From Anaeramoeba ignava BMAN (lineage: Eukaryota > Protista > Anaeramoebae), in contig JAPDFW010000059.1 in the NCBI GenBank assembly GCA_028826165.1, positions 1,364,001 through 1,428,000 on the forward strand: a stretch of DNA of 64,000 nucleotides, read 5' to 3'. The notes under the pieces were generated by a model. It had not been told where the DNA came from. It worked only from the letters and a program-made list of their open reading frames with translations, and did not search any database. This document shows positions 29,801 through 64,000 of the stretch, one piece after another. Numbering within the stretch: the stretch's first letter is position 1; each line of letters begins with the position of its first letter. The position numbers and the translations under genes were made by a program.

Positions 29801-32206
29801 TTATTTTTGTATTCTTCTGGAGAAAATTTTTCAAGACATTTCCAAAATGATTGATTAATTAAATTTTCAAGTTGAATGAAAGAATGATTATTTGTATCTT
29901 TGATATATTTTTGAAAATTTTCATATATTTTTTGAATTTCTTTTTTTAAATCTGAATTGGGAATTTGATTAAAAGATTTATCCAATTTAATTCTCCATTC
30001 TAAAATTAACTTTAAATTGTTATTATTAGTATCTTCTTTTTCTGGTTGCAAAATTGTTTTAATATCATCTGTAAATTTAATTTCTTTTATAGTATTTTCA
30101 AAAAGTTTAAATTGCATATATGATGGTATTGATTGAATAATCTTATCATTTTGAATAATTTTTTGTTTTGAAATAGTTTGAAATATGGATTGAATAAAAA
30201 GGAAAAAGTCATCAGCAATAAAATGAAAAAAAAATTTTAAGTATTTAAATGTATTTGGATCAAAAATAATTTCTAGTTTTTGTATTGAATCTTTTTCTGA
30301 AATAAATTTCTGCTTATAAAAATTTTCAAATATCACTTTTTGAAATGAAATTAATCTATTTTTTTGTTTTTTTTGTAAATTATTAAGTGTTTCTTGAGTA
30401 ATTTCTTGAAATTCATTTGGATCCAAACCATCGAGTATTTCTTGAAAGTCATTTGGATCCAAATCCTTAAATTGATCATGAAATTCTTTATCATTTACAT
30501 AATCACTTTCTGAAAAATCTTCATCTTCATAATAATCTTGATATAACTTATTATTAATTGTATTACCAAAATCAAACCAATATTCAATTTGTTGTTCTTG
30601 TTTATCATTGAAATAATATTCTGACCAATTCAAATTACCAAAAGTATTAATGTTTGTAAATTCTTCTTTGATTGATTTTTTTTCTTCATAATTATGCAAA
30701 GGGTAACATTTTATTTTAAGAAGAAATTTTCTCCAAAAATTATAAAATTCTTCCATTTTTGTAAATTGTAAATTTTTGAAAATTTGTGTAATGAATAAAT
30801 CAAATCGAGAATCAAGATAATCTTTAAATGCATCATTGAAAAAATTTTCAGAAAATAAACGTTTTAATTCTTGTGTTTTTGAATAAATTTTATCATCAAA
30901 AAAAAGATGTAAATTTTTGAATAAAAGCTCAAAATGTACTTTATCTAATTTATTTGATTTAATAAATGTATATATTTCTTGAGACATTTCTTCAGGTGAA
31001 AATTGAGAAAGTAAACTTTCTTTTTTTTCTCTTTGTATAAATCTTAGATAATCAGGAAGAAATAAAAAAAATTGTAAATTCCAAATTTTTTCATCAATTA
31101 TAAATAAGTTTGTAAATTTAATTCTAATTTGCTGATTTTCAAAAAAATCATTTTCATAAATAAAAAGAGCTAAATTTTTTGTGGAATTTTGGAATTTTTG
31201 GAAATAATTCTGAATTTTTGTTTTAAATTCTGACAAATATTTTTCTGAACAAAGACATGTCAAATAAAAGATAATACAATAATTTTTTTCCTAACATTTC
31301 ATTTAGAAATTTTGTTTTGAATGAAATTTGAAGAAAATCATCAATAACATCAGTAAAATTTATTTTTATTTCTTTTTTTTTTTCGATTATTTCTTTGTAG
31401 TTTTTGTCAATTTTCAAAATTTGATTTGTTAATTCTTGTTCAAGAATTTTTTCCATTTCACTTATTTTTTCTTTTTGTATATTTGGTTGAACATTTTCAT
31501 TTCCTTTTTGTATCTTTGGTTCGATACTTTCATTTTCTTTTGTTTTTTCTTTTTCTTCTTGATATCTGACTTTTGAAATTTCTTTTGTTTCTATGTTTTG
31601 TTTTTTAAAAATATTATGATTCATTAAGTTTCTTATTGAAATAGCAAAATTAAAAATAGACTCTTTTTCTTTTTCTTTAGAAGTAAATTCTTCAGAAAGA
31701 AATTCTTCAAAGCATGTATCAATCATTTCTGAAGCAATTTTTTTATAATCTTCTATTACTTTTGGAAATAAAAATAAAGTATTCTGTCGTAATAATTGTT
31801 GAACAGAAAATTGAAAAGATATTTTTGATAATTTAAGTTTTAGGTGAGTCTTAAATTTATTATATTTCAGGATTTTTTCAACATAAATAAAAATAATTTT
31901 AGGATGATATTGAATTTTTGGATTATCCCATGATTTTAAAATTGTTTTGATTCCTTTTCCAGTTGCTTTTTGAATTCCATTTGAAGTTGCTTTTTGAATT
32001 TCTTTTCCAATTTTGATTTTTGAATTTTGAATAAAAAAGAAAAATTGTATTTTTCTTTTTCTTTTGATTTTGATTTTGATTTTGATTTTGATTTTGATTT
32101 TGATTTTGATTTTGATTTTGATTTTGATTTTGATTTTGATTTTGATTTTGATTTTGATTTTGATTTTGATTTTGATTTTTTGTTTTTTTTGTTTTTTGTT
32201 TCTCAT
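23832..32206 (-). CDS. RNF213/mysterin-like giant AAA+ protein (~2,750 aa after reconstruction), lacking the C-terminal E3 module; intron 25188-25118; apparent +1 frameshifts near 31286, 29325 and 29175; start codon uncertain
   Basis: Collinear RNF213-like motifs: SSDFPGMGKS, IPVIFIDG (degenerate Walker A), IPLLIIGKPG|TSKT (Walker A rebuilt by splicing), RHILL, CITNGKKLII...LYKLFNQNY...INPNFRLFVI...IRNHFGKY (compare RNF213 CMETGKMVLL..LYDALNQYY..VHPNFRLIVI..LINRLEKH, quoted from memory). Confidence 0.75.
32064..32178. repeat. Perfect (TTTTGA)n hexamer at the 5' end of the RNF213-like gene
   Basis: Directly visible; reads as (KI)n or (QN)n depending on frame. Confidence 0.9.
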
Positions 32207-37860: not shown

Positions 37861-39649
37861 TTAATTTTGATTTTGATTATTAAATTTGTTAATTAATAAA
37901 TCAAATAAATTTGGATTTGTTTGATTTAATTGAAAATAATCAATTCCAGTTTCTAATTCATTAATGATTTCTTGTGTAATTTCAATTTCATCTTTAATTT
38001 GATTTGAATAAATCCAATATTCAAATATTTGAAATGATTTATTACTTAATTCACTATAATCTGTAACTTTATTAGAAGTATCTTCAGTTACAGATAAAAA
38101 CATTCCTCGATATAATTCACTTCTCATTATTAATATTAATTTAGGAAATTTATATTGTTTTTCTTTTCTTTCAATAATAAAATCTTTTTCATTTTCATTT
38201 TCATTTAAATAAATTCTTTTCATTGTTTCTTCTATTTTTTCATTTAAATTTATAATTTCTTTAATTTCAGAATATAATTTTGGATTTATTATTCTGTTTG
38301 AATAAATCATTTCAAATATTTGATTTGATTCTTTAATTGATTTTTTTGAAATAATTTCTTGAAGTTTTTCAATTTGATTTTCATTTTGATTTAATCTATA
38401 TTTCAATATTAATTTATGAGCTTCAATTATTTCTCCATTTTCGGTTTTAAATGAAATATTGCAAAATTCTTTTCTTCTAAATAATTTTATCAAATCTTCT
38501 TCAAGATTGGAAAAAGGAGGAGGAGAATAATAAAGAAATGATTTGTAAGATCCACAAAGAAACATGATAATTGGAAATATTTTCATTAAATCTTAATTTA
38601 GGAAGTTCAATTTGAATTGGAATTAATTGATTGTTTTTATCTCCAGTTCCTAATTGACCAGAATAGTTATTTCCAAATCCTATTAATTTTGAATTGGATG
38701 TTAAAATCAAAGTATGATTACTTCCAATAGAAATATCAAGAATATCATCATTTTCAAATAAAGATGATTTGATTTCAGTAAATTCATAAGTATGTTCATC
38801 TTCTTTTCCAAGTCCATTATATTGATAATCTCCACATGAATAAAGTTTTCTTTTTGGATTTTCATTTTCATTTTCAATCAACATTATTGAATGATAATAT
38901 CCAGTTTGAATATCAATTATTTTGCCTTTTGGAATATTTTGGATTTTGGTCAATTTTTGGATTTTTCTTTCTTCTATTGATTCTCCTAATCCAAGTTGAA
39001 CATAATCATTTAAACCGCAACAAAATAATTCTTGATTTGAATTTAAAAGAAAAATATGATAACAACAATTTCCTGAAAATATTTTAGAAACATTTTTCAT
39101 TATTAAAATTGGTTTTTCTGTTTCTTCAAGTGTTTTAGAATCAAAACCAAGTTGACCATATTCATTTGAACCAATTCCGTAAGCATTTTGATTTGAAGTT
39201 AATAAGTAAATTGAATAACACCCACAAACAACATCTTGAATTATTCTATCATTTGTATCTTCAATTAATGATGAAATATTGATAAATTCTTTTGGATTTT
39301 TTGGATTAATATCTATTCCTTTGGCAAATACATTTCCTTCTGATGTTAAAATAGCTTCATTTACATAGCCAGAAATGACTTTTTGAATATTTTCTTCAAT
39401 TTGGATTTTTGAAGGATTTCGCTTTGAATTATTTTCATTTGAATATTCTATTGCTTTTCCATTTTTAAAAAGGAAAATTGTTGAAAATCCTGATGATGAA
39501 ATTTGTTTAATTTGTTTTTCATTTTCATTTTCATTTTCATTTTCATTTTCATTTTCAAATTTAAATTGAATTGGTTTTGTTATTTTATTTGATTCATTTT
39601 TGATAAGTTTTGGATTTTGATTTTGACCAAAAAATATAATTTCATTCAT
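37861..39649 (-). CDS. RCC1-repeat + tandem BTB protein, copy A; intronless, one apparent +1 frameshift at 38556-38558
   Basis: RCC1 repeats (AYGIGSNEYGQLG, HTLILT..LIGFGNNYSGQLG). After removing one T the frame reads VSCGSYKSF and continues into BTB (AHKLILKYRL; KDFII..KLILIMRSELYRGMF). Confidence 0.82.
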
Positions 39650-39876
39650 TTTTGAAAAGAAAAAAAATGAAAAAAATGAATTTTAATTTTAATTTTAATT
39701 TTGATTTTGATTTTAATTTTAATTTTAATTTTAATTTTAATTTTAATTCTAAATTTTAATTTTGATTTTAATTTTTAATTTTGATTTTGATTTTAATTTT
39801 GATTTTAATTTTAATTTAAATTTTAATTTTAATTTTTATTTTAATTTTAATTTTAATTTTAATTTTAATTTTAATT

Positions 39877-41639
39877 TTAATTTTGATTATTAAATTTTTT
39901 AATTAATAAATCAAATAAATTTGGATTTGTTTGATTTAATTGAAAATAATCAATTCCTGTTTCTAATTCATCAATAATTTCTTGTGTAATTTCAATTTCA
40001 TCTTTAATTTGATTTGAATAAATCCAATATTCTAATATTTGAAATGATTTATTACTTAATTCACTATAATCTGTAACTTTATTAGAAGTATCATTTGTTA
40101 CAGATAAAAACATTCCTCGATATAATTCACTTCTCATTATTAATATTAATTTTGGAAATTTATATTGTTTTTCTTTTCTTTCAATTATAAAATCTTTTTC
40201 ATTTTCATTTTCATTTAAATAAATTCTTTTCATTGTTTCTTCTATTTTTTCATTTGAATTTATAATTTCTTTAATTTCAGAATATAATTTTGGATTTATT
40301 TTGGAATTATTTGAATAAATCATTTCAAATATTTGATTTGATTCTTTAATTGATTTTTTTGAAATAATTTCTTTAAGTTTTTCAATTTGATTTTGATTTT
40401 GATTTAATCTATATTTCAATATTAATTTATGAGCTTTGATTATTTCTCCATTTTCTGGTTTTAAATGAAATATCACAAAATTCTTTTCTTTCAAATAATT
40501 TTATCAAATCTTCTTCAAGACTTGATATTATAGGATAAAAAAGAATAGAATTATTTTCTCCACAAGAAAGATGATAATTGGAAATATTAAATAATAATTG
40601 AGGAAGTTCAATTTGAACAGGCAAATTTTTCCTTTTTGTATTCCCATTCCCTAATTGACCATATTCATTACTCCCAAATCCTATTAGTTTTCCACTTTCA
40701 GTTAAAATCAAAGTATGTCGAAAACCGTTTGCAATTTCAAGAATATTATCATTTTCAAATAATTTTATCCTCATTTCAGTGAATTCTCTTGTATTTTGGC
40801 TATTCTTCAGACTTTTTAATTCAAATAAACCACTAGAGTAAATTTTTCTTAATCCTGATTCTTGATCTTCAATCAACAACATTGAGCGTAATCCTCTTAA
40901 TTGAATATCAATTATTTTGCCTTTTGGAATATTTTGGATTTTTGGTTAATTGATTAACTTTTGCTTCTTTTATTGATTTCCCTAATCCGAGTTGACCAAA
41001 AAAATTATCACCGCAACAAAACAATTCTTGATTTGAATTTAAAATAAAAACACAATTTGAAAAATTTCCTGAAAATATTTTAGAAACATTTTTCATCATT
41101 AAAATTGGTTTTTCTGTTTTTTTAAGTGTTTCAGAATCACAAGAAAGTTGGCCATGATCATTAGAACCAATTCCATAAGCATTTTGATTTGAAGTTAATA
41201 AGTAAATTGTGTTTTTTCCAGAAACAACATCTTGAATTATTCTATCATTTGTATCTTCAATTAATAATGTGATTTCCTTATAAGTTCTTGAAATCTTTGT
41301 TTTGTATCGATTTTGTCTTATGAAAACTTGACCTTTTTCTGATAAAAGAGCCTCATTTTCAATTCCAACAGAAATTTTTTTAATTTTTGGAAATTTGAGT
41401 TTTTTTGGATCTAAACCAACAATAAATTGAATCACTTCTCCACTGATGAAAAGAACATTTGTGATAAATTTATTTGATGCAATTTGTTTTATTGGTTCTT
41501 CTTGTAAATTTACAGTTGTCATTTGATGTGGTTTTGTTATTTGATAAGGATCATCTGAAAAACGATTAAAGAAAGGATTTTGACCAAAAATCCAAATATC
41601 ATTTTTTTGATTAAAATTGAAGTTTGAATTCGAGTTCAT
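39877..41639 (-). CDS. RCC1-repeat + tandem BTB protein, copy B; intronless, apparent +1 frameshifts at 40939-40943 and ~40456 (possible pseudogene)
   Basis: Collinear with copy A; alignment to copy A places both extra bases (LTKIQNIPKG; SFKTENGEII). Confidence 0.78.
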
Positions 41640-45410: not shown

Positions 45411-46493
45411 ATGTCTCAACAACTTAAAGAAGTTTTTGAAAGTGCAATTCAAACTCAAATTTGGAAAATTGATCTTTCCAATAAAGAAATAACTGATTTA
45501 AAAGAAATTGATTTTTCCAAACTTGAACATTTAGAAATTTTAGATTTAACAAACAATAATTTAAAAGAAATACCAGATTCAATTTGCGAAATGAAAAATT
45601 TAAAACGGCTTTTATTATCTCACAATAAATTAAAATCTTTGCCAAAAAATATTGGCAAACTTTCTAATTTGGAATGGCTTCATCTCTCTTATAATGAAGA
45701 TTTATCTTCTCTTCCTGATATTTCAGCTCTTGTTAATTTAACTGAACTTGATTTGAGTCATTGTAGTTTTAATGCTCTTCCTGGTGGTTTAGAAAAACTT
45801 AAAAAACTCACGACTATTGATGTATTTTGTTTCATTTCCTTTTTTCTTTTAAAAATTCATTTATAAAATTTAATTTAAAATTAAAATTAAAATTTATAAA
45901 ATTAAAATTAAAATTAAAATTAAATTTAAATTCATTTATAAAATTAAAATTAAAATTCATTTATAAAATTCATTTATAAAATTCATTTATAAAATTTATT
46001 TATAAAATTAAAATTAAATTCATTTATAAAATTAAAATTAAATTCATTTATAAAATTAAAATCAAAATTCATTTATAAAATTAAAATTAAAATTAAATTC
46101 ATTTATAAAATTAAAATTTAAATTAAAATTAAAATTAATTTATAAAATTAAAATTAAATTTAAAATTAAAATCAATATTAAAATTAAAATTATTTTTAGG
46201 CAAGTTCAAATCAAATCAAAGCTATCAATCCTTCAATTTGTAAAATGAAATCTTTAGGAAGATTATATTTAGATCATAATAAACTTAATCGAATTCATCA
46301 AGATTTTGGTTCTTTTCAAAATCTTAAAGTGCTTGATTTAAGTTTCAATCAAATTGTTGAACTTCCTTTTTCATTAACAAATCTTGATGGTTTATGGGAA
46401 CTTCATTTAGAAGGAAATGAAAAACTTAAAAATCCTCCTCAAGATGTTTTAAACAAAGAACCAAAAGAAATTTTAAGTTACATCAAAAAATAA
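45411..46493 (+). CDS. Stand-alone leucine-rich-repeat protein (~234 aa); exons 45411-45821, 46200-46493
   Basis: LxxLxLxxNxLxxLPxxI repeats; phase-0 GT-AG intron 45822-46199; C-cap LKNPPQDVLNKEPKEILSYI. Confidence 0.88.
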
Positions 46494-46587: not shown

Positions 46588-49500
46588 TTAGAAGTCAGTT
46601 TCTTCAATACTTTGTAAATATAAATCTTTTTCAGTATTAACAGTTTCCATAACAATATCATCAATATTTCCTTGATCATTCATTTCATTTTCATTTTCAT
46701 TTTCATCAATATCATTAACTGAATAAACAGTAACTGATGGTGTTACTTTAACTACTTTTCTTTTTTTATACCAATAAAATGCAACTCCTCCAACAACTGC
46801 TAATGCTCCAAAACTTGTTCCAAGTCCTGCATATAATCCTGTTTTAGATGTTGTACTTGGTTCAGAATCTGTTTTAAAATAAAATTTATTACTCCAAATT
46901 GAATATCCAATTTCATTTGTTGATCTAACTTCAATAGAATAATTTGTTGATGAACTTAAATTTGCAACAACTCCACTATTAATTGTTGTAAATGTTTCAC
47001 TTGTTTCATTTTCATTTTCATTTTTGATTGATTTTATTTCATATTGAATTATTGATTCGGCATTAATTCTTGGTTTATTCCATTCAATACTTAATGAATT
47101 ATATGATTTTTTTGTATTATATAATTCTTTGATTTGTTCTGGAATTGTTTTATTGGTTTCAAATTGAAATGATTTACTCCATTCTCCAAAATATTCATTA
47201 ATTTCTGCTCGAACTTTAACTGAATAATTTGTAAATGGAATTAAATTATCAAATGAAAAAAGATCTGAAATGAAATTAGTTCGATTAAATCCTGTATCAA
47301 GAAGAACTGTATATGTTGTAATATCTGGATCATTTAAATTTTCCCATCCAATAACTGCTGAATATGATTCAAGATTTTTTAAGAATATTCCTTCAATTTG
47401 TGAAGGTGCAAATGTTTGTGTACTTATTGAAAAATTTGATGAATTTCCAAATCCAATTGAATTAAATGGAATTATTATTATTGTATAATTGGTTTGTGTT
47501 GTTAAATTATAAAATGATCCTTGATTTGTATTAACTTGAATTTGAATTGAATTTGTTGAATTGTTATCTTCAATACATGTAACATTATATCCTTCAATGT
47601 ATCTTCCTCCATTATTAGGTTCATTCCAACTTAAAATTAAATAAGTTCTTCTAATTTCGATTGGAATTAATTCTTCAACTTTAAATGGTACTTCTGCTGA
47701 ATATGTTGAGATGTTTTTATCTTCACTCCATTCATTACATTCTCCAATAGGATTAATTGCTTTCATTGAAATTGAATATTCTCCTGATATTAAATTACTA
47801 ATATTATATTCATTTTCTGTTGAATTAATTTCAATTTGTGTTGAATTTTGAATACTTAAATTGGAAAATCTATATGAAAGAATATAAGAAGTAATATTTA
47901 ATCCTCCATTGTTTGGTTTTTTCCAATTTACTTTGATTGATGTTGAACTTAATGTTGTTGCATTAACTTGTTCCATTTGTTTTGGTGTTGTTGGTTGTGA
48001 TGTTGATGCAATTAATGTTTCTGAATAATTTGATTGTCCAATTTCATTTATTGATGAAATTGAAATATCGAATGTTCCTGATAAAAGTGAATTAAATTGA
48101 TATTGATATTCACTTATTGGTGGTTCAATTTGAATATATTGTGTAATATTTGTTGAATATGGAGTAAATGAAAAAATATAATTGATTATTGTTCTTCCAT
48201 TATCATTTGGTTTATCCCATTTAATTGTAATTGAGGTTGATGTTGCTGAAATTTGAGTTAATCCTGTAATTATATCTGGAATATTTGGTGATAATGTATT
48301 CATTAAAACTAAAATTCCTTCTGATTCTCCAATAGAATTAATTGAATAAACTGTAATATTATAAGAATCTGAAAGTAAATTTGTTAAATTATATTCTGAT
48401 ACAACTTCATTTGTTGAAATATTTCCATTTGAACCATTAGAACTTAATCCTTTATATTCAATAATGAAATATAGAATTGGTTTACCTCCATTTGAAATTG
48501 GTTGATTCCAACTCATATAAATTGAAGTTGAAGTTGAATTAATAAATAAAAGATTTGAAATTGGAGAAGGTGAAGTTGGTTGTAAAGTTGAAAAAACAAT
48601 AACATCACTTGTTGCTCCTTCTCCATTTTGATTTGTTGCTGATATTTTGATACTATAATTTCCTGAATAAATATTATTAAGAACATAATCATTTATTGAA
48701 GGTGATGGATTTCCTTCTAAATCAATTAAAATTTCATTCCAAAATGTATCACTTGTTAATTTATAATATAAATTATAAGAAGTAATATCACTTCCTCCAT
48801 TTCCTGGTTTTTCCCATTCAATTCCTAATGATGTTGATGTTGAATTAATTAATGAAGGAATTGATATTTTATCTGGAATAGTTGAATCATCAGTTGAAAT
48901 TGTTGCAATATCACTCCAATAATAAGACCATCCAGCATCATTATATGCTTTGATTTCAAAATCATATGATGTTTCAGATTCAAGATCTCCAATAATACAA
49001 CTTAATGATGTATTCATTATATTAATTACATCTGTAAATATTGAATCATTACTTAATTTATATTGAATTTTATATGCTTTAACTTCATCTCCACCTTGAT
49101 CATTTGGAATAAACCATCCTAATGTTATTGAAGTTGGTGAACTTGAAATTTTATAAGGTTTATTCATAATTCCAGGAGGAGAAGGAGGATTAGTATTCAT
49201 TATAAATTCAGTTCCATTATTTGAAAATCCAACTGAATTATTTGATTGCATTTTGATTGTATAAGTTCCTGAAAGTAATGAAGTTAATGTATAATAAAGA
49301 TTTGTACTAAAAAGATCAATAGAGTAAAAATCTTCAGAAGGTGTTGAATTTTCATATTTATACCAAATTTTATATCCAATAATTGTTGAACCTCCATTTG
49401 ATGGTTTAATCCAAGAAATTGAAATTGATGAAGAAGTTTTTCCAGTTTGTGAAATTGAATTAACTGGTGATGGAATTGTTGATGGATCAGTTTCAATAGT

Positions 49501-52442
49501 TAAATTATAACTTAAATCAGATTCAGGAGTAATTGAATTCAAAGCACGAATAGCTATTGTATAATTTGCATAATCTAAATTAGGAATTGTTGCTTCAAGA
49601 ACATCAGGAGAAACAAGTTGATAATTCCAATTTGTTTCAGGAATTTTCAAAAAAGAAATTTGATAATTTGTAATTTCACTTCCCCCATTTGATTGAGGAG
49701 CTGACCAATTAATAGAAATTGAATCACCAGTATGATTAATTTCATTTAATGAAGTAATAACAGAAGGACAAGTTGCTGGATCAGTCCAAATTGAAAAATC
49801 AGATGAAAAATCTCCAATAAATAATTCACTTTTTGCTCTAACTTTAACAATATATTCACCAGAAAGAATTGAAGTAATATGAAATGAATGAATATCAACT
49901 CCAAAACTATAAGTATTCCAAGTTTGATTACCAGCTTTATGAAACCAAAGATCATATCCAATTAAAGGAGATCCTCCATTTGAAGCAGTTCCCCAAGTTA
50001 TACCAAATGAAGTTGAAGATTTCCAAGATAAATCTTCAGAAATTGAAGGAGGAGAAGGAGGAATTGCACTTAAAGTACTTGCAGCAGTTTCAAGTGTCCA
50101 AACTCCAGTTCCTATTTATTTTTTTTCCAATATTTATATTTTAAATTAATTTGATTTGGAAATATAAATAATAAATCAAAATAATAAATAATCATATTTA
50201 AAATTTAATTTAATAAAAATAAGAATAATAAATACCTTCATTATTATATCCAGCAACTTGAGTTAAATAATTTCCTGAATATAAATTACTAATTGTATAT
50301 TGATGAACATCTCCAACAAGAGTAACTTCAATCCAATTACTTTCTCCATAAGGTGTATATTTAACTTTATATCCAAGAACTGAAAAATTAGGAGGATTTC
50401 CCCATAATAATCTAAATGAAGTTGGAGTTTGTGAATCAAAAGTAGGTTGTGACATTTGAGTTGGAGTACATTCTGTTTTACCACTTCCTGAATTTGTTGT
50501 GCCATTTGGACATGAACTACATCCTGTATTTCCTGTTCCAGTATTATAAGTATTTTGATTACATTGAGTACATGAAGCAACATTTGTTGATGTTGAATAT
50601 GTTCCTGCAACACAAAATGGACAAGTTGGAGTTGGAAGAGATGAACCAGCAAGACAAACACATTGTCCATTTGGTTGACAATTTCCTCCATTATAACATT
50701 CATTACAACTTGACATTCCATTTTCATTATATTGACATGAGCTCGCATATATATTTTTTTGACCACTTCCAGTATTATCAACAATAACAACATTTGTCCA
50801 ATTAAGTTTAGGATCAAGCAATCCTAAATCTCTGTTGCAATATAAACCACCACCAGATGTAGAAGCATAATTATCTTTGATTAATATATTTGTAAGTTCT
50901 GTTGAACATAATCCATTATAAATTGCTCCTCCTTTATTTCCTCGATTATTCACAAATATACTATTTCTCAGTACTGGATACCAATTATTGTTTAAACAAT
51001 AGAATCGAATTGCACCTCCTATTTTGATTTTTGATTTAAATTTGATTTAAATAATATTAAATAATAAATAATAAATATTAAATAATAAATATTAAATAAT
51101 AAATATTAAATAATAATAAATAATAAATAATAAATATTAAATATTAAATATTAAATAATAAATATTAAATAATAAATATTAAATATTAAATATTAAATAT
51201 TAAATATTAAATATTAAATATTAAAATATAAAAATATAAATATTAAATATTAAATATTAAAATAAAATAAAATAAATATTAAATAATAAATATTAAATAA
51301 TAAATATTAAATATTAAATATTAAATAATAAATATTAAATAATAAATATTAAATAATAAATAAATAATAAATATTAAATAACAAATAAAAATATTAAAAA
51401 TAAATTAAAATAAATATTAAAATATAAAATAAATTAAAATTAAAAATAAATATTAAATATTAAATAAATAATAAATATTAAATATTAAATATTAAATAAT
51501 AATAAATATTAAATATTAAATAAATATTAAATATTAAATATTAAAATATAAAAATAAATTAAAAAATATTAAATATTAAATAATAAATATTAAATAAATA
51601 ATAAATATTAAATATTAAATAATAAATATTAAATATTAAATATTAAATATTAAATATTAAATATTAAATATTAAATAATAAATATTAAATAATAAATATT
51701 AAATAATAAATATTAAATATTAAATATTAAATATTAAATATTAAATATTAAATATTAAATATTAAATATTAAATATTAAATATTAAATATTAAATATTAA
51801 ATATTAAATATTAAATATTAAATATTAAATATTAAATAATAAATATTAAATATTAAATAATAAATATTAAATATTAAATAATAAATATTAAATAATAAAT
51901 ATTAAATAATAAATAATAAATATTAAATATTAAATATTAAATATTAAATATTAAATATTAAATAATAAATAAATACCTTTATCACTATTACAATTTTGGA
52001 ATGTAAAACCATCAACTAAAGGTGAACTTGAATCATGAACATACATACATTGTCTTGCATTTCCTCCATCTAAAATAGTTACATCAGGTCCTCCAGTAGA
52101 AACAATATACCAAGTAGCATCTTGTCTATCTATTGTTTGAGAAAGATAATAATGACCAGGATAAACACAAACAATATCACTATTTCCACTAACTGATAAT
52201 CCTTTTTCGATTGTAGCACATGCAGTTTCATATGATTCACAATTATTACCATCACTTCCAAATGATTGAGCAATATATTTTGTACATGTATAACTTGTAT
52301 CATCAAATTTATAATTTGCTAATATTCTTTCTAATTTTATCACTCCTTCATTATTATTTGGATTTGTTTTTGAAGTTGAAATTGAAAATATTGTAAATAT
52401 TAAAGTTATTCCAAAAAATATTATTAATTTTGGGTTTTTCAT
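46588..52442 (-). CDS. Type I membrane receptor/adhesin, copy 1 (~1,590 aa): signal peptide, right-handed beta-helix head (GGAI repeats), EGF-like and Cys-rich segment, 12 FN3, TM, acidic tail; exons 52442-51977, 51018-50236, 50111-46588
   Basis: GSDGNNC..ACATIEKGL..VCVYPGHY..GGPDVTILDG..VDGFTFQN, GGAI/GGGLY repeats, CYNGGNCQPNGQCVC, CVAGTYS..CNQNTYN, 12 W..P.NGG..I..Y FN3 units, TM GLYAGLGTSFGALAVVGGVAFYWY followed by KKRK. Two phase-1 GT-AG introns. Confidence 0.88.
51045..51970. repeat. (AAATATT/AAATAAT)n heptamer array filling intron 1 of receptor copy 1
   Basis: Directly visible; homologous array at ~58065-58868 in copy 2. Confidence 0.9.
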
Positions 52443-53258
52443 TTCCTTTTAATTAATTTTTATTTTAATTTAGTTTTTTGTGAATTTAGTTGATTAAAAT
52501 TTTTGTTTTGGTTATTCTCTTTTTATTTTAAAATTTGAGAGTAAACAAAAAAAATGAAAAAAAAAGAAAAAAAAATAAATAAACAAAAAGAAAAAAAAAA
52601 GTGTCCAATTATCAAAAATTTCATAATAATTATTATTTTTTTTTTTCCAATTAAAAAATTTTATTTAAAAAAAAAAACAAAATTTGAAAAGAGAAAATAA
52701 ATAGAAAAGATTAAATTAAATAATTAATTTTGTTTATTTAAAATTAAAAGATCGAAAAAAAAAAGAATAATTAATTAATTTATTTAAATTTTAATTTATA
52801 AAAGAAAAAGAAAAAGAAAATTAAATAATTAAATAAATTAGTTTTAAAGAGATTAATTTTTAAAGGAATAATTAATAAAAATTTAATTTAAATTAATTTA
52901 ATTCATTTAAAAAAAAAAGTGGAATAAAATTTATTTTTTTATTTAAATTTTCCAAAAATAAAAAATTAAATAAAAATAATCAAAATAAATTTTAATTTTT
53001 AAATATCAAAAGAATAATTTGTTTATTTATTTATTTGTTTATTTATTTGTTTATTTGTTTAATCCAAAAATTATTTTTGAAATTAAAAAAAATTTAATTT
53101 TGTTATTTTTTTTGATTTTATTCTTTTTTTTTTGGAATTGATTGAAAAAGATTTGAAAAAAAGATTTGGAAAAAGATTGAAAAAAAGAAGAAAGATTTGG
53201 AAAAAATTGAATTAAATTTTGAAATTGAATTTTGTTTTGGAATTGTTGTTTTGATAAA

Positions 53259-56200
53259 TTATTTTTTAGAATCATTTTCATCAATACTTTGTAAATATAA
53301 ATCTTTTTCAGTATTAACAGTTTCCATAACAATATCATCAATATTTCCTTGATCATTCATTTCATTTTCATCTCCAAGAAGAGGTTCATCAATATCATTA
53401 ACTGAATAAACAGTAACTGATGGTGTTACTTTAACTACTTTTCTTTTTTTATACCAATAAAATGCAACTCCTCCAACAACTGCTAATGCTCCAAAACTTG
53501 TTCCAAGTCCTGCATATAATCCTGTTTTGGATGTTGTACTTGGTTCAGAATCTGTTTTAAAATAAAATTTGTTACTCCAAATTGAATATCCAATTTCATT
53601 TGTTGATCTAACTTCAATAGAATAATTTGTTGATGAACTTAAATTTGCAACAACTCCACTGTTAATTGTTGTAAATGTTTCACTCGTTTCATTTTCATTT
53701 TCATTTTCATTTTTGATTGATTTTATTTCATATTGAATTATTGATTCGGCATTAATTCTTGGTTTATTCCATTCAATACTTAATGAATTATATGATTTTT
53801 TTGTATTATATAATTCTTTGATTTGTTCTGGAATTGTTTTATTGGTTTCGAATTGAAATGGTTTACTCCATTCTCCAAAATATTCATTAATTTCTGCTCG
53901 AACTTTAACTGAATAATTTGTAAATGGAATTAAATTATCAAATGAAAAAAGATCTGAAATGAAATTAGTTCGATTAAATCCTGTATCAAGAAGAACTGTA
54001 TATGTTGTAATATCTGGATCATTTAAATTTTCCCATCCAATAACTGCTGAATATGATTCAAGATTTTTTAAGAATATTCCTTCAACTTGTGAAGGTGCAA
54101 ATGTTTGTGTACTTATTGAAAAATTTGATGAATTTCCAAATCCAATTGAATTAAATGGAATTATTATTATTGTATAATTGGTTTGTGTTGTTAAATTATA
54201 AAATGATCCTTGATTTGTGTTAACTTGAATTTGAATTGAATTTGTTAAATTGTTATCTTCAATACATGTAACATTATATCCATCAATATATCTTCCTCCA
54301 TTATTAGGTTCATTCCAACTTAAAATTAAATAAGTTCTTCTAATTTCGATTGGAATTAATTCTTCAACTTTAAATGGTACTTCTGCTGAATATGTTGAGA
54401 TGTTTTTATCTTCACTCCATTCATTACATTCTCCAATAGGATTAATTGCTTTCATTGAAATTGAATATTCTCCTGATATTAAATTACTAATATTATATTC
54501 ATTTTCTGTTGAATTAATTTCAATTTGTGTTGAATTTTGAATACTTAAATTGGAAAATCTATATGAAAGAATATAAGAAGTAATATTTAATCCTCCATTG
54601 TTTGGTTTTTTCCAATTTACTTTGATTGATGTTGAACTTAATGTTGTTGCATTAACTTGTTCCATTTGTTTTGGTGTTGTTGGTTGTGATGTTGATGCAA
54701 TTAATGTTTCTGAATAATTTGATTGTCCAATTTCATTTATTGATGAAATTGAAATATCGAATGTTCCTGATAAAAGTGAATTAAATTGATATTGATATCC
54801 ACTTGTTGGTGGTTCAATTTGAATATATTGTGTAATATTTGTTGAATATGGAGTAAATGAAAAAATATAATTGATTATTGTTCTTCCATTATCATTTGGT
54901 TTATCCCATTTAATTGTAATTGAAGTTGATGTTGCTGAAATTTGAGTTAATCCTGTAATTATATCTGGAATATTTGGTGATAATGTATTCATTAAAACTA
55001 AAATTCCTTCTGATTCTCCAATAGAATTAATTGAATAAACTGTAATATTATAAGAATCTGAAAGTAAATTTGTTAAATTATATTCTGATACAACTTCATT
55101 TGTTGAAATATTCCCATTTGAACCATTAGAACTTAATCCTTTATATTCAATAATGAAATATAAAATTGGTTTACCTCCACTTGAAATTGGTTGATTCCAA
55201 CTCATATAAATTGAAGTTGAAGTTGAATTGATAAATAAAAGATTTGAAATTGGAGAAGGTGAAGTTGGTTGTAAAGTTGAAAAAACAATAACATCACTTG
55301 TTGCTCCTTCTCCATTTTGATTTGTTGCTGATATTTTGATACTATAATTTCCTGAATAAATATTATTAAGAATATAATCATTTATTGAAGGTGATGGATT
55401 TCCTTCTAAATCAATTAAAATTTCATTCCAAAATGTATCACTTGTTAATTTATAATATAAATTATAAGAAGTAATATCACTTCCTCCATTTCCTGGTTTT
55501 TCCCATTCAATTCCTAATGATGTTGATGTTGAATTAATTAATGAAGGAATTGATATTTTATCTGGAATAGTTGAATCATCAGTTGAAATTGTTGCAATAT
55601 CACTCCAATAATAAGACCATCCAGCATCATTATATGCTTTGATTTCAAAATCATATGATGTTTCAGATTCAAGATTTCCAATAATACAACTTAATGATGT
55701 ATTCATTATATTAATTACATCTGTAAATATTGAATCATTACTTAATTTATATTGAATTTTATAAGCTTTAACTTCATCTCCACCTTGATCATTTGGAATA
55801 AACCATCCTAATGTTATTGAAGTTGGTGAACTTGAAATTTTATAAGGTTTATCCATAATTCCAGGAGGAGAAGGAGGATTAGTATTCATTATAAATTCAG
55901 TTCCATTATTTGAAAATCCAACTGAATTATTTGATTGCATTTTGATTGTATAAGTTCCTGAAAGTAATGAAGTTAATGTATAATAAAGATTTGTACTAAA
56001 AAGATCAATAGAGTAAAAATCTTCAGAAGGTGTTGCATTTTCATATTTATACCAAATTTTATATCCAATAATTGTTGAACCTCCATTTGATGGTTTAATC
56101 CAAGAAATTGAAATTGATGAAGAAGTTTTTCCAGTTTGTGAAATTGAATTAACTGGTGATGGAATTGTTGATGGATCAGTTTCAATAGTTAAATTATAAC

Positions 56201-59200
56201 TTAAATCAGCTTCAGGAGTAATTGAATTCAAAGCACGAATAGCTATTGTATAATTTGCATAATCTAAATTAGGAATTGTTGCTTCAAGAACATCAGGAGA
56301 AACAAGTTGATAATTCCAATTTATTTCAGGAATTTTCAAAAAAGCAATTTGATAATTTGTAATTTCACTTCCACCATTTGATTGAGGAGCTAACCAATTA
56401 ATAGAAATTGAATCACTAGTATGATTAATTTCATTTAATGAAGTAATAACAGAAGGACAAGTTGCTGGATCAGTCCAAATTGAAAAATCAGATGAAAAAT
56501 CTCCAATAAATAATTCACTTTTTGCTCTAACTTTAACAATATATTCACCAGAAAGAATTGAAGTAATATGAAATGAATGAATATCAACTTCAAAACTATA
56601 AGTATTCCAAGTTTGATTACCAGCTTTATGAAACCAAAGATCATATCCAATTAAAGGAGATCCTCCATTTGAAGCATTTCCCCAAGTTATACCAAATGAA
56701 GTTGAAGATTCCCAAGATAAATCTTCAGAAATTGAAGGAGGAGAAGGAGGAATTGCACTTAAAGTACTTGCAGCAGTTTCAAGTGTCCAAACTCCAGTTC
56801 CTATTTATTTTTTTTCCAATATTTATATTTTAAATTAATTTAATTTGGGAATATAAATAATAAATCAAAATAATAAATAATCATATTTAAAATTTAATTT
56901 AATAAATCAAAATAATTTGGGAATAAAAATAATAAATCAAAATAATAAATAATCATATTTAAAATTTAATTTAATAAATCAAATTAATTTTGGGAATAAA
57001 AATAATAAATCAAAATAATAAATAATCATATTTAAAATTTAATTTAATAAATTAATTTAATTTGGAAATATAAATAATAAATCAAAATAATAAATAATCA
57101 TATTTAAAATTTAATTTAATAAATTAAAATAATTTGGGAATATAAATAAATTGAAATTGATTTTGAATAAAAATAAGAATAATAAATCAAAATAATTTGG
57201 AAATATAAATAATAAATCAAAATAATAAATACCTTCATTATTATATCCAGCAACTTGAGTTAAATAATTTCCTGAGTATAAATTACTAATTGTATATTGA
57301 TGAACATCTCCAACAAGAGTAACTTCAATCCAATTACTTTCTCCATAAGGTGTATATTTAACTTTATATCCAAGAACTGAAAAATTAGGAGGATTTCCCC
57401 ATAATAATCTAAATGAAGTTGGAGTTTGTGAATCAAAAGTAGGTTGTGACATTTGAGTTGGAGTACATTCTGTTTTACCATTTCCTGAATTTGTTGTGCC
57501 TCCTGGACATGAACTACATCCTGTATTTCCTGTTCCAGTATTATAAGTATTTTGATTACATTGAGTACATGAAGCAGAATTTGTTGATGTTGAATATGTT
57601 CCTGCAACACAAAATGGACAAGTTGGAGTTGGAAGAGATGAACCAGCAAGACAAACACATTGTCCATTTGGTTGACAATTTCCTCCATTATAACAGTCGT
57701 TACAATCATACACACGATTTCCATTATATTTACATGAATATGATGACCACCATAATGAATTATCTTCAATATTTTTTTGACCATTTCCAGTATTATCAAC
57801 AATAACAACATTTGTCCAATCAATATTATTATGAATCAATCCAAAATCAATCGAGCAATATAAACCACCACCAGATGAAGAAGCATAATTATCTTTGATT
57901 AATACATTTGTAAGTTCTGTTGAACATAATCCATTATAAATTGCTCCTCCTTTACTTGCTCGATTATTAATTAATTTACTATTTCTCAGTACTGGATACC
58001 AATTCACAATCAAACAATAGAATTGAATTGCACCTCCTATTTTGATTTTTGATTTAAATTTGATTTAAATAATAATAAATAATATTAAATAATAAATAAT
58101 AAATATTAAATATTAAATATTAAATAATAAATATTAAATAATAAATATTAAATAATAAATATTAAATATTAAATATTAAATAATAAATATTAAATAATAA
58201 ATATTAAATAATAAATAATAAATATTAAATAATAAATATTAAATATTAAATAATAAATATTAAATATTAAATAATAAATATTAAATAATAAATATTAAAT
58301 ATTAAATAATAAATAATAAATATTAAATATTAAATAATAAATATTAAATATTAATAAATAATAAATATTAAATATTAAATAATAAATATTAAAATAAATA
58401 ATAAATATTAAATAATAAATATTAAATAATAAATATTAAATAATAAATAAATAAAAATAAATAAATATTAAATAATAAATATTAAATAATAAATAATAAA
58501 TAATAGATAATAAATATTAAATATTAAATAATAAAATAATAAATATTAAATAATAAATATTAAATATTAAATATTAAATAATAGATAATAAATAATAAAT
58601 ATTAAATAATAAATAATAAATATTAAATATTAAATAATAAATATTAAATATTAAATAATAAATAATAAATAATAGATAATAAATAATAAATATTAAATAT
58701 TAAATATTAAATAATAAATATTAAATATTAAATAATAAATATTAAATAATAAATATTAAATATTAAATATTAAATAATAAATATTAAATATTAGATATTA
58801 AATAATAAATATTAAATATTAGATATTAAATATTAAATATTAAATATTAAATATTAAATAATAAATAAATACCTTTATCACTATTACAATTTTGGAATGT
58901 AAAACCATCAACTAAAGGTGAACTTGAATCATGAACATACATACATTGTCTTGCATTTCCTCCATCTAAAATAGTTACATCAGGTCCTCCAATAGAAACA
59001 ATATCCCACCAAACATCCCATCTATCTATTGTTTGAGAAAGATAATAATGACCAGGATAAACACAAACAGTATCACTATTTCCACTAACTGATAATCCTT
59101 TTTCGATTGTAGCACATGCAGTTTCATATGATTCACAATTATTACCATCACTTCCAAATGATTGAGCAATATATTTTGTACATGTATAACTTGTATCATC

Positions 59201-59338
59201 AAATTTATAATTTGCTAATATTCTTTCTAATTTTATCACTTCTTCATTATTATTTGAATTTGTTTTTGAAGTTGAAATTGAAAATATTGTAAATATTAAA
59301 GTTATTCCAAAAAATATTATTAATTTTGGGTTTTTCAT
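53259..59338 (-). CDS. Type I membrane receptor/adhesin, copy 2; exons 59338-58873, 58036-57233, 56800-53259
   Basis: Same architecture and intron positions as copy 1. Confidence 0.88.
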
Positions 59339-60008
59339 TTCCTTTTAATTAATTTTTAATTTCTTTTTTAATTTAGTTTTTTGTGAATTTGAAAAAGAAG
59401 ATTAAAAAAAAATGAAAAAAAAATAAAAAAAATTATTTTTAAGTTGTGATTAAAGAAAAAATTGTGATAATTATGATGATTTTTTTGATTGAAATTGAAA
59501 ATTGTTAAAATGTGGCAAAAAATAATTAAAACAAGTGAAAAAAAGAAAAAAAAGAAAAAAAATTTTTGTTAAATTGATTAATCTTTATTTACTTATTTTT
59601 TTTTATTTAAATTTTCCAAAAATAAAAAATTAAATAAAAATAATCAAAATAAATTTTAATTTTTAAATATCAAAAAAATAATTTGTTTATTTATTTATTT
59701 GTTTGTTTGTTTGTTTATTCCAAAAATTATTTTTGAAATTAAAAAAAATTTAATTTTGTTATTTTTTTTGATTTTATTTTTTTTTTTTTTAAAAAGATTT
59801 GAGAAAAAGATTTGAAAAAGAAGAAAAGATTTGATTGAAAAAGATTTTGAAAAAAGATTTGAAAAAAAGATTTGAAAAAAAGATTGAAAAAAGAAGAAAG
59901 ATTTGAAAAAAAGATTTGGAAAAAGATTGAAAAAAAGAAGAAAGATTTGGAAAAAATTGAATTAAATTTTGAAATTGAATTTTGTTTTGGAATTGTTGTT
60001 TTGATGAA

Positions 60009-63000
60009 TTATTTTTTAGAAGTAGTTTCTTCAATACTTTGTAAATATAAATCTTTTTCAGTATTAACAGTTTCCATAACAATATCATCAATATTTCCTT
60101 GATCATTCATTTCATTTTCATTTTCATCAATATCATTAACTGAATAAACAGTAACTGATGGTGTTACTTTAACTACTTTTCTTTTTTTATACCAATAAAA
60201 TGCAACTCCTCCAACAACTGCTAATGCTCCAAAACTTGTTCCAAGTCCTGCATATAATCCTGTTTTGGATGTTGTACTTGGTTCAGAATCTGTTTTAAAA
60301 TAAAATTTATTACTCCAAATTGAATATCCAATTTCATTTGTTGATCTAACTTCAATAGAATAATTTGTTGATGAACTTAAATTTGCAACAACTCCACTAT
60401 TAATTGTTGTAAATGTTTCACTTGTTTCATTTTCATTTTCATTTTTGATTGATTTTATTTCATATTGAATTATTGATTCTCCATTAATTCTTGGTTTATT
60501 CCATTCAATACTTAATGAATTATATGATTTTTTTGTATTATATAATTCTTTGATTTGTTCTGGAATTGTTTTATTGGTTTCGAATTGAAATGATTTACTC
60601 CATTCTCCAAAATATTCATTAATTTCTGCTCGAACTTTAACTGAATAATTTGTAAATGGAATTAAATTATCAAATGAAAAAAGATCTGAAATGAAATTGG
60701 TTCGATTAAATCCTGTATTAAGAAGAACTGTATATGTTGTAATATCTGGATCATTTAAATTTTCCCATCCAATAACTGCTGAATATGATTCAAGATTTTT
60801 TAAGAATATTCCTTCAACTTGTGAAGGTGTAAATGTTTGTGTACTTATTGAAAAATTTGATGAATTTCCAAATCCAATTGAATTAAATGGAATTATTATT
60901 ATTGTATAATTGGTTTGTGTTGTTAAATTATAAAATGATCCTTGATTTGTGTTAACTTGAATTTGAATTGAATTTGTTAAATTGTTATCTTCAATACATG
61001 TAACATTATATCCTTCAATGTATCTTCCTCCATTATTAGGTTCATTCCAACTTAAAATTAAATAAGTTCTTCTAATTTCGATTGGAATTAATTCTTCAAC
61101 TTTAAATGGTACTTCTGCTGAATATGTTGAGATGTTTTTATCTTCACTCCATTCATTACATTCTCCAATAGGATTAATTGCTTTCATTGAAATTGAATAT
61201 TCTCCTGATATTAAATTACTAATATTATATTCATTTTCTGTTGAATTAATTTCAATTTGTGTTGAATTTTGAATACTTAAATTAGAAAATCTATATGAAA
61301 GAATATAAGAAGTAATATTTAATCCTCCATTATTTGGTTTTTTCCAATTTACTTTGATTGATGTTGAACTTAATGTTGTTGCATTAACTTGTTCCATTTG
61401 TTTTGGTGTTGTTGGTTGTGATGTTGATGCAATTAATGTTTCTGAATAATTTGATTGTCCAATTTCATTTATTGATGAAATTGAAATATCGAATGTTCCT
61501 GATAAAAGTGAATTAAATTGATATTGATATCCACTTATTGGTGGTTCAATTTGAATATATTGTGTAATATTTGTTGAATATGGAGTAAATGAAAAAATAT
61601 AATTAATTATTGTTCTTCCATTATCATTTGGTTTATCCCATTTAATTGTAATTGAAGTTGATGTTGCTGAAATTTGAGTTAATCCTGTAATTATATCTGG
61701 AATATTTGGTGATAATGTATTCATTGAAACTAAAATTCCTTCTGATTCTCCAATAGAATTAATTGAATAAACTGTAATATTATAAGAATCTGAAAGTAAA
61801 TTTGTTAAATTATATTCTGATACAACTTCATTTGTTGAAATATTCCCATTTGAACCATTAGAACTTAATCCTTTATATTCAATAATGAAATATAGAATTG
61901 GTTTACCTCCATTTGAAATTGGTTGATTCCAACTCATATAAATTGAAGTTGAAGTTGAATTAATAAATAAAAGATTTGAAATTGGAGAAGGTGAAGTTGG
62001 TTGTAAAGTTGAAAAAACAATAACATCACTTGTTGCTCCTTCTCCATTTTGATTTGTTGCTGATATTTTGATACTATAATTTCCTGAATAAATATTATTA
62101 AGAATATAATCATTTATTGAAGGTGATGGATTTCCTTCTAAATCAATTAAAATTTCATTCCAAAATGTATCACTTGTTAATTTATAATATAAATTATAAG
62201 AAGTAATATCACTTCCTCCATTTCCTGGTTTTTCCCATTCAATTCCTAATGATGTTGATGTTGAATTAATTAATGAAGGAATTAATATTTTATCTGGAAT
62301 AGTTGAATTATCAGTTGAAATTGTTGCAATATCACTCCAATAATAAGACCATCCAGCATCATTATATGCTTTGATTTCAAAATCATATGATGTTTCAGAT
62401 TCAAGATCTCCAATAATACAACTTAATGATGTATTCATTATATTAATTACATCTGTAAATATTGAATCATTACTTAATTTATATTGAATTTTATAAGCTT
62501 TAACTTCATCTCCACCTTGATCATTTGGAATAAACCATCCTAATGTTATTGAAGTTGGTGAACCTGAAATTTTATAAGGTTTATTCATAATTCCAGGAGG
62601 AGAAGGAGGATTAGTATTCATTATAAATTCAGTTCCATTATTTGAAAATCCAACTGAATTATTTGATTGCATTTTGATTGTATAAGTTCCTGAAAGTAAT
62701 GAAGTTAATGTATAATAAAGATTTGTACTAAAAAGATCAATAGATTTAAAATCTTCAGAAGGTGTTGCATTTTCATATTTATACCAAATTTTATATCCAA
62801 TAATTGTTGAACCTCCATTTGATGGTTTAATCCAAGAAATTGAAATTGATGAAGAAGTTTTTCCAGTTTGTGAAATTGAATTAACTGGTGATGGAATTGT
62901 TGATGGATCAGTTTCAATAGTTAAATTATAACTTAAATCAGATTCAGGAGTAATTGAATTCAAAGCACGAATAGCTATTGTATAATTTGCATAAATCAAA

Positions 63001-64000
63001 TTAGGAATTGTTGCTTCAAGAACATCAGGAGAAACAAGTTGATAATTCCAATTTGTTTCAGGAATTTTCAAAAAAGCAATTTGATAATTTATAATTTCAC
63101 TTCCACCATTTGATTGAGGAGCTGACCAATTAATAGAAATTGAATCACCAGTATGATTAATTTCATTTAATGAAGTAATAACAGAAGGACAAGTTGCTGG
63201 ATCAGTCCAAATCGAAAAATCAGATGAAAAATCTCCAATAAATAATTCACTTTTTGCTCTAACTTTAACAATATATTCACCAGAAAGAATTGAAGTAATA
63301 TGAAATGAATGAATATCAACTCCAAAACTATAAGTATTCCAAGTTTGATTACCAGCTTTATGAAACCAAAGATCATATCCAATTAAAGGAGATCCTCCAT
63401 TTGAAGCATTTCCCCAAGTTATACCAAATGAAGTTGAAGATTTCCAAGATAAATCTTCAGAAATTGAAGGAGGAGAAGGAGGAATTGCACTTAAAGTACT
63501 TGCAGCAGTTTCAAGTGTCCAAACTCCAGTTCCTATTTATTTTTTTTCCAATATTTATATTTTAAATTAATTTAATTTGGAAATATAAATAATAAATCAA
63601 AATAATAAATAATCATATTTAAAATTTAATTTAATAAATCATATTTAAAATTAAAATAAATTAAAATTTTGGGAAATAAATAAATTGAAAAAAATAATAA
63701 AATCAAAAAAATAAATAAAAATTTAATTTAAATAATCATATTTAAAATTTAATTTAATAAATTAAAATAATAAATACCTTCATTATTATATCCAACAACC
63801 TGAGTTAAATAATTTCCTGAATATAAATTACTAATTGTATATTGATGAACATCTCCAACAAGAGTAACTTCAGTCCAATTACTTTCTCCATAAGGTGTAT
63901 ATTTAACTTTATATCCAAGAACTGAAAAATTAGGAGGATTTCCCCATAATAATCTAAATGAAGTTGGAGTTTGTGAATCAAAAGTAGGTTGTGACATTTG
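60009..64000 (-). CDS. Type I membrane receptor/adhesin, copy 3 (5' part outside the window); exons >64000-63778, 63532-60009
   Basis: Nearly identical FN3 stalk, TM and tail; same intron 2 position. Confidence 0.88.

What the first reader, a model, noticed from the sequence alone, without database searches (positions are those of the whole stretch)
46588..64000. Tandem array of surface receptors with hypervariable beta-helix heads on near-identical 12xFN3 stalks: candidate recognition system
Seen: the ~1,170-aa third exon (11 FN3, TM, tail) differs among the three copies only by scattered substitutions. In copies 1 vs 2 the distal head has dense clusters of non-synonymous change between invariant framework residues: DRQDATWYIVST vs DRWDVWWDIVSI; AIRFYCLNNNWYP..SIFVNNRGNK vs AIQFYCLIVNWYP..SKLINNRASK; CNRDLGLLDPKLNWT vs CSIDFGLIHNNIDWT; IYASSCQYNENGMSSCNE vs IEDNSLWWSSYSCKYNGNRVYDCND (with an indel). 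Several changes add aromatic residues, especially Trp. Established: GGAI-type beta-helix repeats form adhesin/glycan-binding folds (e.g. Chlamydia Pmp-like repeats), and variable-head/constant-stalk tandem arrays typify allorecognition and non-self receptors. Inference: a diversifying receptor repertoire for prey, symbiont or kin recognition, held far from the membrane by a long FN3 rod. Only two heads are inside the window.
Basis: partly seen in the sequence, partly recalled or inferred. Interest (0 to 1): 0.85.

Follow-up and report, generated by a model that had tools for sequence, protein, structure and literature searches.

The report
Variable-head surface receptors of Anaeramoeba
An anaerobic amoeba that houses bacterial symbionts carries a small family of surface receptors on long, nearly identical stalks, whose tips differ mostly along one predicted binding groove, making them testable candidates for how it tells bacteria apart.

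Summary
The window is from Anaeramoeba ignava. Three intact tandem genes encode a signal peptide, a Pmp-like right-handed beta-helix head (pLDDT 90), a Cys-rich unit, 12 FN3 domains, one TM helix and an acidic tail. Heads differ by 10-16%, stalks by about 2%. The genome has 14 head-bearing genes; five end in an NF1-like RasGAP with its arginine finger. The variable-head pattern recurs in three other paralog pairs. In two subfamilies variation concentrates on the PB1/T1 groove edge (T1 23/38 vs T3 8/45). The head framework is homogenised even between contigs, leaving narrow divergence peaks, as expected when selection resists gene conversion. Limits: head dN/dS is only about 1-1.5 (stalk 0.4-0.5), the site-model signal vanishes when multi-nucleotide changes are allowed, the repertoire is small, there is no silent-cassette archive and no aromatic enrichment. 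The ligand is unknown; bacterial surface glycans are my best inference. No read-level check was possible.

The parts
51977..52442 (-). Copy A exon 1: signal peptide, capping helix, first two beta-helix coils
   Evidence: junction matches database models and the EukProt transcript of paralog D
52095..52130 (-). Copy A variable patch 1 (PB1/T1 of coil 1, residues 105-116)
51019..51976 (-). Copy A intron 1, 958 bp, almost pure A/T repeat; 836, 131 and 518 bp in B, C, D
50236..51018 (-). Copy A exon 2: GGAI coils 3-6, Cys-rich unit, FN3 number 1
50936..51007 (-). Copy A variable patch 2 (coil 3: PB1, T1 loop through T3)
50801..50836 (-). Copy A variable patch 3 (T1 loop of coil 5)
50699..50767 (-). 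Copy A variable patch 4 (coil 6 loop and cap; 7 aa shorter than B)
46588..50111 (-). Copy A exon 3: 11 FN3, TM helix, acidic cytoplasmic tail
46768..46839 (-). Copy A transmembrane helix, followed by a basic stop-transfer stretch
   Evidence: read directly from the sequence
58873..59338 (-). Copy B exon 1; variable patch 1 at 58991-59026
57233..58036 (-). Copy B exon 2; variable patches at 57954-58025, 57819-57854, 57696-57785
53259..56800 (-). Copy B exon 3: 11 FN3, TM, tail
63778..64000 (-). Copy C, 3' part of exon 2; the rest and exon 1 lie beyond the window, up to G000:C1:1429160
60009..63532 (-). Copy C exon 3: 11 FN3, TM, tail

Best explanation
A small inherited family of single-pass surface receptors. 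A non-catalytic beta-helix head, related to prokaryotic Pmp-like surface domains, sits on a heavily N-glycosylated 12xFN3 rod. Gene conversion keeps the paralogs alike over the stalk and the head framework, while selection keeps different residues on the PB1/T1 groove, so each copy binds a different ligand. The most likely ligands are bacterial surface polysaccharides of prey or symbionts. The window's copies have no signalling domain and would act as capture or uptake receptors through the conserved acidic tail; five relatives couple the same head to a RasGAP. Shown by computation: gene structure, fold, location of variation, conversion, RasGAP motifs. Inferred: selection as the cause, ligand class, role of the tail.
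For: Fold: pLDDT 90; best solved matches are polysaccharide lyases, hydrolases and tailspikes, Z 15-18; atlas matches are Chlam_PMP/DUF1565 proteins, TM 0.73-0.77. No invariant D/E/K/R/H in 18 heads. PB1+T1 vs rest of helix: 27/62 vs 21/107 variable in A-D (p=0.001) and 33/62 vs 14/107 in the C61 pair; variable sites overlap between the two subfamilies (p=0.008). PB1, T1 and T3 form the ligand groove in this fold (PMC8952511). Amino-acid-changing to silent codons, A/B: head 35:3, stalk 19:12, p=0.003; same direction in three more pairs, p=0.004-0.04. A/D silent differences per conserved codon: head 2.6%, stalk 12.7%, p=6e-6. Silent changes cluster next to amino-acid changes (25/210 vs 17/614). 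Conversion plus relaxed constraint alone gives the A/B head-to-stalk ratio of 8.9 in at most 5% of simulations. Divergence peaks under conversion are a published signature of selection (PMC3924837). The genome paper counts pectin-lyase-fold LGT proteins among host-symbiont candidates (PMC11550330).
Against: M2a vs M1a is significant with single-step codon models (LRT 33-41) but zero when multi-nucleotide changes are allowed (omega 0.32-0.37 vs 0.08 in the stalk). Pooled PB1+T1 dN/dS is 1.5 (p=0.04) but about 1.1 with conservative path counting. The groove bias is absent in the C121 pair and weak in C59/C143, where 5' edge effects confound. Face assignment came from secondary structure and coil register, not from coordinates. 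T3 loops are structurally constrained, so they are an imperfect control. No ligand, localisation or expression data for A-C.
Confidence: 0.5

Rival explanations
1. Neutral mosaic: conversion homogenises the long exon 3 more easily than the short head exons flanked by unalignable introns, and exposed loops simply tolerate change.
For: Head dN/dS is close to 1; the multi-hit model removes omega>1; silent divergence is raised inside the patches; the C121 and C59/C143 pairs diverge toward the 5' edge.
Against: In A/B the first 300 coding bases are 297/300 identical and the last 39 codons of exon 1, next to the intron, are identical; silent divergence in the helix framework is 0.006 vs 0.19 in PB1+T1; simulation P at most 0.05 (introns not modelled); the same sites vary in the C61 pair.
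Confidence: 0.17
2. Escape rather than recognition: the head is a docking site for a virus or intracellular bacterium, and variation evades it.
For: Arms-race patches look the same in sequence; a Legionellales endosymbiont is known in A. pumila.
Against: Variation sits in the fold's own ligand groove rather than across the surface; all copies are intact and there is no archive for switching.
Confidence: 0.13
3. Kin or self recognition between amoebae, as with TgrB1/TgrC1 or Alr proteins.
For: Long stalk, variable distal domain, and paired signalling (RasGAP) and non-signalling forms.
Against: Variation is between paralogs. Orthologous heads of two A. flamelloides strains differ no more than their stalks in six of seven pairs. 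The transcript of D differs from the genome copy at only 4 residues.
Confidence: 0.1
4. Surface-tethered polysaccharide lyase or hydrolase with copy-specific substrate range.
For: The closest solved folds are PL9, PL6, GH enzymes and tailspike depolymerases.
Against: No invariant charged residue; the outward PB1 ladder varies freely; the helix has about six coils, shorter than those enzymes.
Confidence: 0.07
5. Assembly or haplotype artefact.
For: Near-identical stalks; no read-level check was possible.
Against: Introns, 5' flanks and 3' ends differ between copies; unique genes lie on both sides of the array on a 1.8-Mb contig; differences are codon-structured with open frames; the pattern recurs at other loci.
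Confidence: 0.03

Closest known systems
Trichomonad Pmp-like surface proteins (PMC6701047)
   Same: Sister lineage; N-terminal GGA[ILV]/FxxN repeats, one TM helix, acidic cluster in the cytoplasmic tail; adhesion shown for the Trichomonas proteins.
   Different: Here a short capped helix plus Cys unit on 12 FN3; no ATPITK or NPx[YF] motif; RasGAP-coupled relatives; no trichomonad protein was identified among the full-head matches.
Bacterial and archaeal Chlam_PMP/DUF1565 beta-helix surface proteins
   Same: Same capped GGAI beta-helix; about 30% identity, E to 1e-39; TM-score 0.73-0.77.
   Different: Usually several helices in tandem with T9SS, PKD or Ig tails; they lack the invariant cysteines, the TM helix and the FN3-TM-tail layout.
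Multigene recognition families under conversion plus selection (MHC, plant R clusters, self-incompatibility loci; PMC3924837)
   Same: Mosaic paralogs, homogenised framework, divergence peaks at the presumed binding face.
   Different: Unrelated fold; no pseudogene donors found for this subfamily; allelic polymorphism not shown.
Dictyostelium TgrB1/TgrC1 and Hydractinia Alr (from memory)
   Same: Single-pass proteins with a variable distal domain on Ig-like repeats.
   Different: Those have Ig/IPT heads and extreme allelic polymorphism; here a beta-helix head with paralog variation.
Plexins and neurofibromin (for the RasGAP-bearing paralogs)
   Same: Receptor with a cytoplasmic Ras-family GAP (plexins, from memory); GAP sequence closest to NF1, E=3.5e-26, with arginine-finger and FLR motifs aligned.
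   Different: Unsplit NF1-type GAP, no Sema domain; the window's own copies have no GAP.

Membership tests
Chlamydial Pmp | GGA[ILV] and FxxN repeats forming a beta-helix | tested here: inconclusive
   Motifs present and fold predicted, but PF02415 scores 19 bits against a cut-off of 20.6
Chlamydial Pmp | C-terminal autotransporter barrel | tested here: not met
   FN3 rod, TM helix and tail instead
Trichomonad Pmp-like | Single TM helix and acidic cytoplasmic cluster | tested here: met
   Tail 21-24% D/E
Trichomonad Pmp-like | ATPITK motif and NPx[YF] endocytic motif | tested here: not met
   Absent from the sequences (definition)
Beta-helix lyases/hydrolases (PL9, PL6, GH28, tailspikes) | Right-handed parallel beta-helix | tested here: met
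   Z=17.8, rmsd 3.8, 211 aligned to Pel9A
Beta-helix lyases/hydrolases (PL9, PL6, GH28, tailspikes) | Conserved catalytic acidic or basic residues in the groove | tested here: not met
   Invariant columns are only G, C, N, T, A, S; the PB1 ladder varies
Allorecognition receptors (Tgr, Alr) | Extreme allelic polymorphism among isolates | tested here: inconclusive
   One A. ignava genome only; A. flamelloides strain pairs show head bias in 1 of 7
Allorecognition receptors (Tgr, Alr) | Allele-specific binding in trans | not testable with these tools
   Needs binding assays
Cassette-based antigenic variation (VSG, vls, msp2) | Archive of silent donor cassettes | tested here: not met
   DNA and protein searches of the genome find only whole genes
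Cassette-based antigenic variation (VSG, vls, msp2) | Mutually exclusive expression | not testable with these tools
Diversity-generating retroelement target | Adenine-only changes relative to a template repeat | tested here: not met
   Changes involve all bases; no separate template copy
Diversifying family under gene conversion | Divergence peaks flanked by homogenised sequence | tested here: met
Diversifying family under gene conversion | omega above 1 at specific sites | tested here: inconclusive
   Significant with single-hit models, absent with multi-hit models; 1.1-1.5 by counting
RasGAP (paralogs on C8, C13, C59, C81, C143) | PF00616 domain with arginine finger and FLR motif | tested here: met

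The most novel reading that the evidence does not exclude
These genes are partner-selection receptors of the symbiosome: a beta-helix taken from prokaryotes, diversified on its glycan groove, and deployed as GAP-less capture receptors alongside RasGAP-coupled receptors that hold back phagosome maturation when the right bacterium is bound.
Probability: 0.15. Interest if true: 0.87.

Novelty: new variant of a known kind. Interest (0 to 1): 0.57.

Why it matters
How Anaeramoeba selects and keeps its Desulfobacteraceae symbionts while eating other bacteria is open; the genome paper only lists domain counts as candidates. This gives 14 specific genes, a predicted binding edge and four natural variants that can be expressed and assayed. 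A single-pass receptor ending in an NF1-type RasGAP in a metamonad would be a plexin-like design reached independently; my three literature searches found no description, which is weak evidence of novelty.

Tried and rejected
First reading of the paralogs' cytoplasmic domain as a kinase: wrong, it is RasGAP. NG86 on whole heads: ratio 0.8-1.1, not above 1. M2a positive-selection result: not robust to multi-nucleotide changes. Runs test for clustering of informative sites in the head: p=0.11. Aromatic enrichment: rejected. Silent cassettes and a DGR template: none found. Partial transcripts of A-C: none found. Trees of exon 2 and of the last stalk domains did not resolve whether GAP-bearing or GAP-less forms came first. 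The atlas feature search on the TM-RasGAP part was blank. I submitted no spliced model of my own: searches were exon by exon by reference, or used database proteins returned by the tools.

Full report
Organism and gene structure. Homology hits place the window in Anaeramoeba ignava, an A+T-rich free-living metamonad with a bacterial symbiosome (PMC11550330). The window is G000:C1:1364001-1428000. Three minus-strand genes lie head to tail, each with three exons and phase-1 GT-AG introns. Database gene models give the same junctions for A (P0048), B (P0047) and C (P0001), and a EukProt transcript of the fourth close copy D on contig C72 (P0002) confirms both junctions for that paralog. Each protein of about 1590 aa has a signal peptide, a head of about 220 aa, a Cys-rich unit (weak ephrin-receptor-like match), 12 FN3 domains, a TM helix and an acidic tail of about 60 aa. 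The proteins have 32-44 N-glycosylation sequons, of which the head has 0-1.

Is it real? Intron 1 is 958, 836, 131 and 518 bp in A-D, and upstream sequence diverges within about 25 bp of the ATG. Unique genes flank the array. All frames are open. A haplotype duplicate is therefore unlikely. Four runs of one sample, apparently DNA, hold 33-78% of the words of copy A and no RNA run was listed.

Family. Exon-wise searches find 14 head-bearing genes: A-C, D, two on C61, two in tandem on C121 and one on C35, all with a short acidic tail; and five (C8, C13, C59, C81, C143) ending in RasGAP. The GAP is closest to neurofibromin, with the arginine-finger and FLR motifs aligned. Among 1.8 billion representatives, the matches covering the whole head that I looked up were all Anaeramoeba proteins. 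In A. flamelloides the head sits on FN3 plus tail (P0070) or on Cys-rich repeats plus a multi-TM region. Prokaryotic Chlam_PMP/beta-helix proteins match the helix part at about 30%. Lateral origin is plausible but was not tested by a tree.

Fold. AlphaFold2 on head B gives pLDDT 90 and pTM 0.89: a capping helix and about six coils. The best solved matches are BT_1002 (Z 18.0), Pel9A (17.8), alginate and rhamnogalacturonan lyases and tailspikes. The best predicted matches are Chlam_PMP/DUF1565 proteins. Across 18 Anaeramoeba heads only G, C, N, T, A and S are invariant, including four cysteines at the base of the T1 loops. That suggests a stapled binding surface rather than an enzyme (inference).

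Where the variation lies. I assigned residues to PB1/T1/PB2/T2/PB3/T3 from secondary structure and repeat register, without coordinates. In A-D, 27/62 PB1+T1 positions vary against 21/107 elsewhere (p=0.001), and T1 23/38 against T3 8/45 (p=9e-5). In the independent C61 pair the figures are 33/62 against 14/107, and the variable sites overlap between the two subfamilies (p=0.008). The outward PB1 ladder varies at 3/6 positions in A-D and 5/6 in C61. PB1 with T1 and T3 forms the substrate groove in this fold (PMC8952511). The C121 pair shows no such bias and C59/C143 only a weak one.

How it evolved. A/B/C heads differ by 10-16% and stalks by 1.6-2.0%. The other pairs give 27.5 vs 2.9%, 28 vs 3.1% and 31 vs 5.3%. 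In the stalk D is a clear outgroup (294/344 variable sites are D-only), but in the head it is not (16/86), and informative sites switch between AC|BD and AD|BC. Silent differences per conserved codon between A and D are 2.6% in the head against 12.7% in the stalk. So head sequence moves between contigs by conversion, the opposite of the 'stalk-only conversion' refutation. Silent changes sit next to amino-acid changes (4.7-fold odds), so the patches are older than their surroundings. They are flanked by near-identical sequence on both sides in A/B. A simple model of conversion plus fully relaxed heads, without introns, reaches the observed ratio in 0-5% of runs. This matches the published peak-of-divergence signature of selection under conversion (PMC3924837).

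Caveat on selection. Codon-level counts favour amino-acid change in all four sets (p 0.003-0.04 for the C1 pairs and the three other pairs). Single-hit site models give LRT 33-41 for omega>1 in the head and 2.5 in the stalk. Allowing multi-nucleotide changes removes the signal, leaving omega 0.32-0.37 against 0.08. Counting gives 1.1-1.5 on PB1+T1 and 0.4-0.5 in the stalk. Selection is thus supported by location, repetition and peak shape more than by omega itself. No silent donor archive exists, so this is a small inherited set and not a switching system.

Mechanism. Most likely each receptor holds its groove well away from the membrane and binds a distinct surface polysaccharide of bacteria. 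The GAP-less copies would pass bound cells to uptake or retention through tail motifs conserved with A. flamelloides P0070, and the RasGAP members would turn binding into local Ras/Rap inactivation. Ligand class, localisation and tail function are inference. Escape from a parasite, kin recognition and neutral mosaicism remain open.

Comparison and verdict. The nearest described proteins are trichomonad Pmp-like adhesins (TM plus acidic tail, PMC6701047), but their ATPITK and NPx[YF] motifs are absent and the FN3 rod and RasGAP are new. The genome paper lists 9 pectin-lyase-fold and 9 FN3 LGT candidates in A. ignava as possible host-symbiont factors without describing this family; whether these genes are among them I could not tell. 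The logic is known (variable head, conversion plus selection); the architecture appears undescribed. New variant of a known kind, interest 0.57.

Noticed in passing
L053, L057, L058, L054, L052 (contigs C59, C143, C81, C13, C8): Five single-pass receptors: beta-helix head, FN3 rod, TM, NF1-like RasGAP with arginine finger; three have EukProt-type or NCBI models. No description found in three literature searches.
   Followed up: partly
P0007, P0067, P0068, P0077, P0080, P0082, P0088 (A. flamelloides): The same head on Cys-rich repeat stalks with a multi-TM C-terminus; the head is a swappable module.
   Followed up: partly
P0088 vs P0223: The one A. flamelloides strain pair with head-biased divergence (7.9% vs 2.3%, p=1e-4); allelic variation or non-orthologous paralogs.
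   Followed up: partly
P0218 (EukProt transcript): The N-terminus resembles the C59 gene but the C-terminal end resembles the C8 gene: chimeric assembly or a recombinant.
   Followed up: no
P0002 vs P0049: The transcript of copy D differs from the genome copy at 4 residues; at 136 it has the A/B/C state.
   Followed up: partly
window 53370-53385: Copy B alone has a short tail insertion creating a DxxLL-type acidic dileucine, a possible sorting difference.
   Followed up: no
L051 (C35) and L052 (C8): Reading frames of these family members are split in the assembly; pseudogenes or sequencing errors.
   Followed up: no
G000 whole genome: RasGAP is strongly expanded: 140 exon-level matches to PF00616.
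   Followed up: no
window 37861-41639: Tandem RCC1-BTB genes with similar BTB halves; also noted by the scan (s1-707957).
   Followed up: no
window 23832-32206: Very large protein with AAA-like features; the scan calls it RNF213-like (s1-707834).
   Followed up: no
window 45411-46493: Small two-exon leucine-rich-repeat gene converging on copy A, ending about 95 bp from its stop.
   Followed up: no
window 4140-7874: Long ankyrin-repeat plus BTB-like protein in one exon.
   Followed up: no
window 51019-51976 and 58037-58872: Introns made almost wholly of TAAATAT-type repeats, GC about 2-6%.
   Followed up: no
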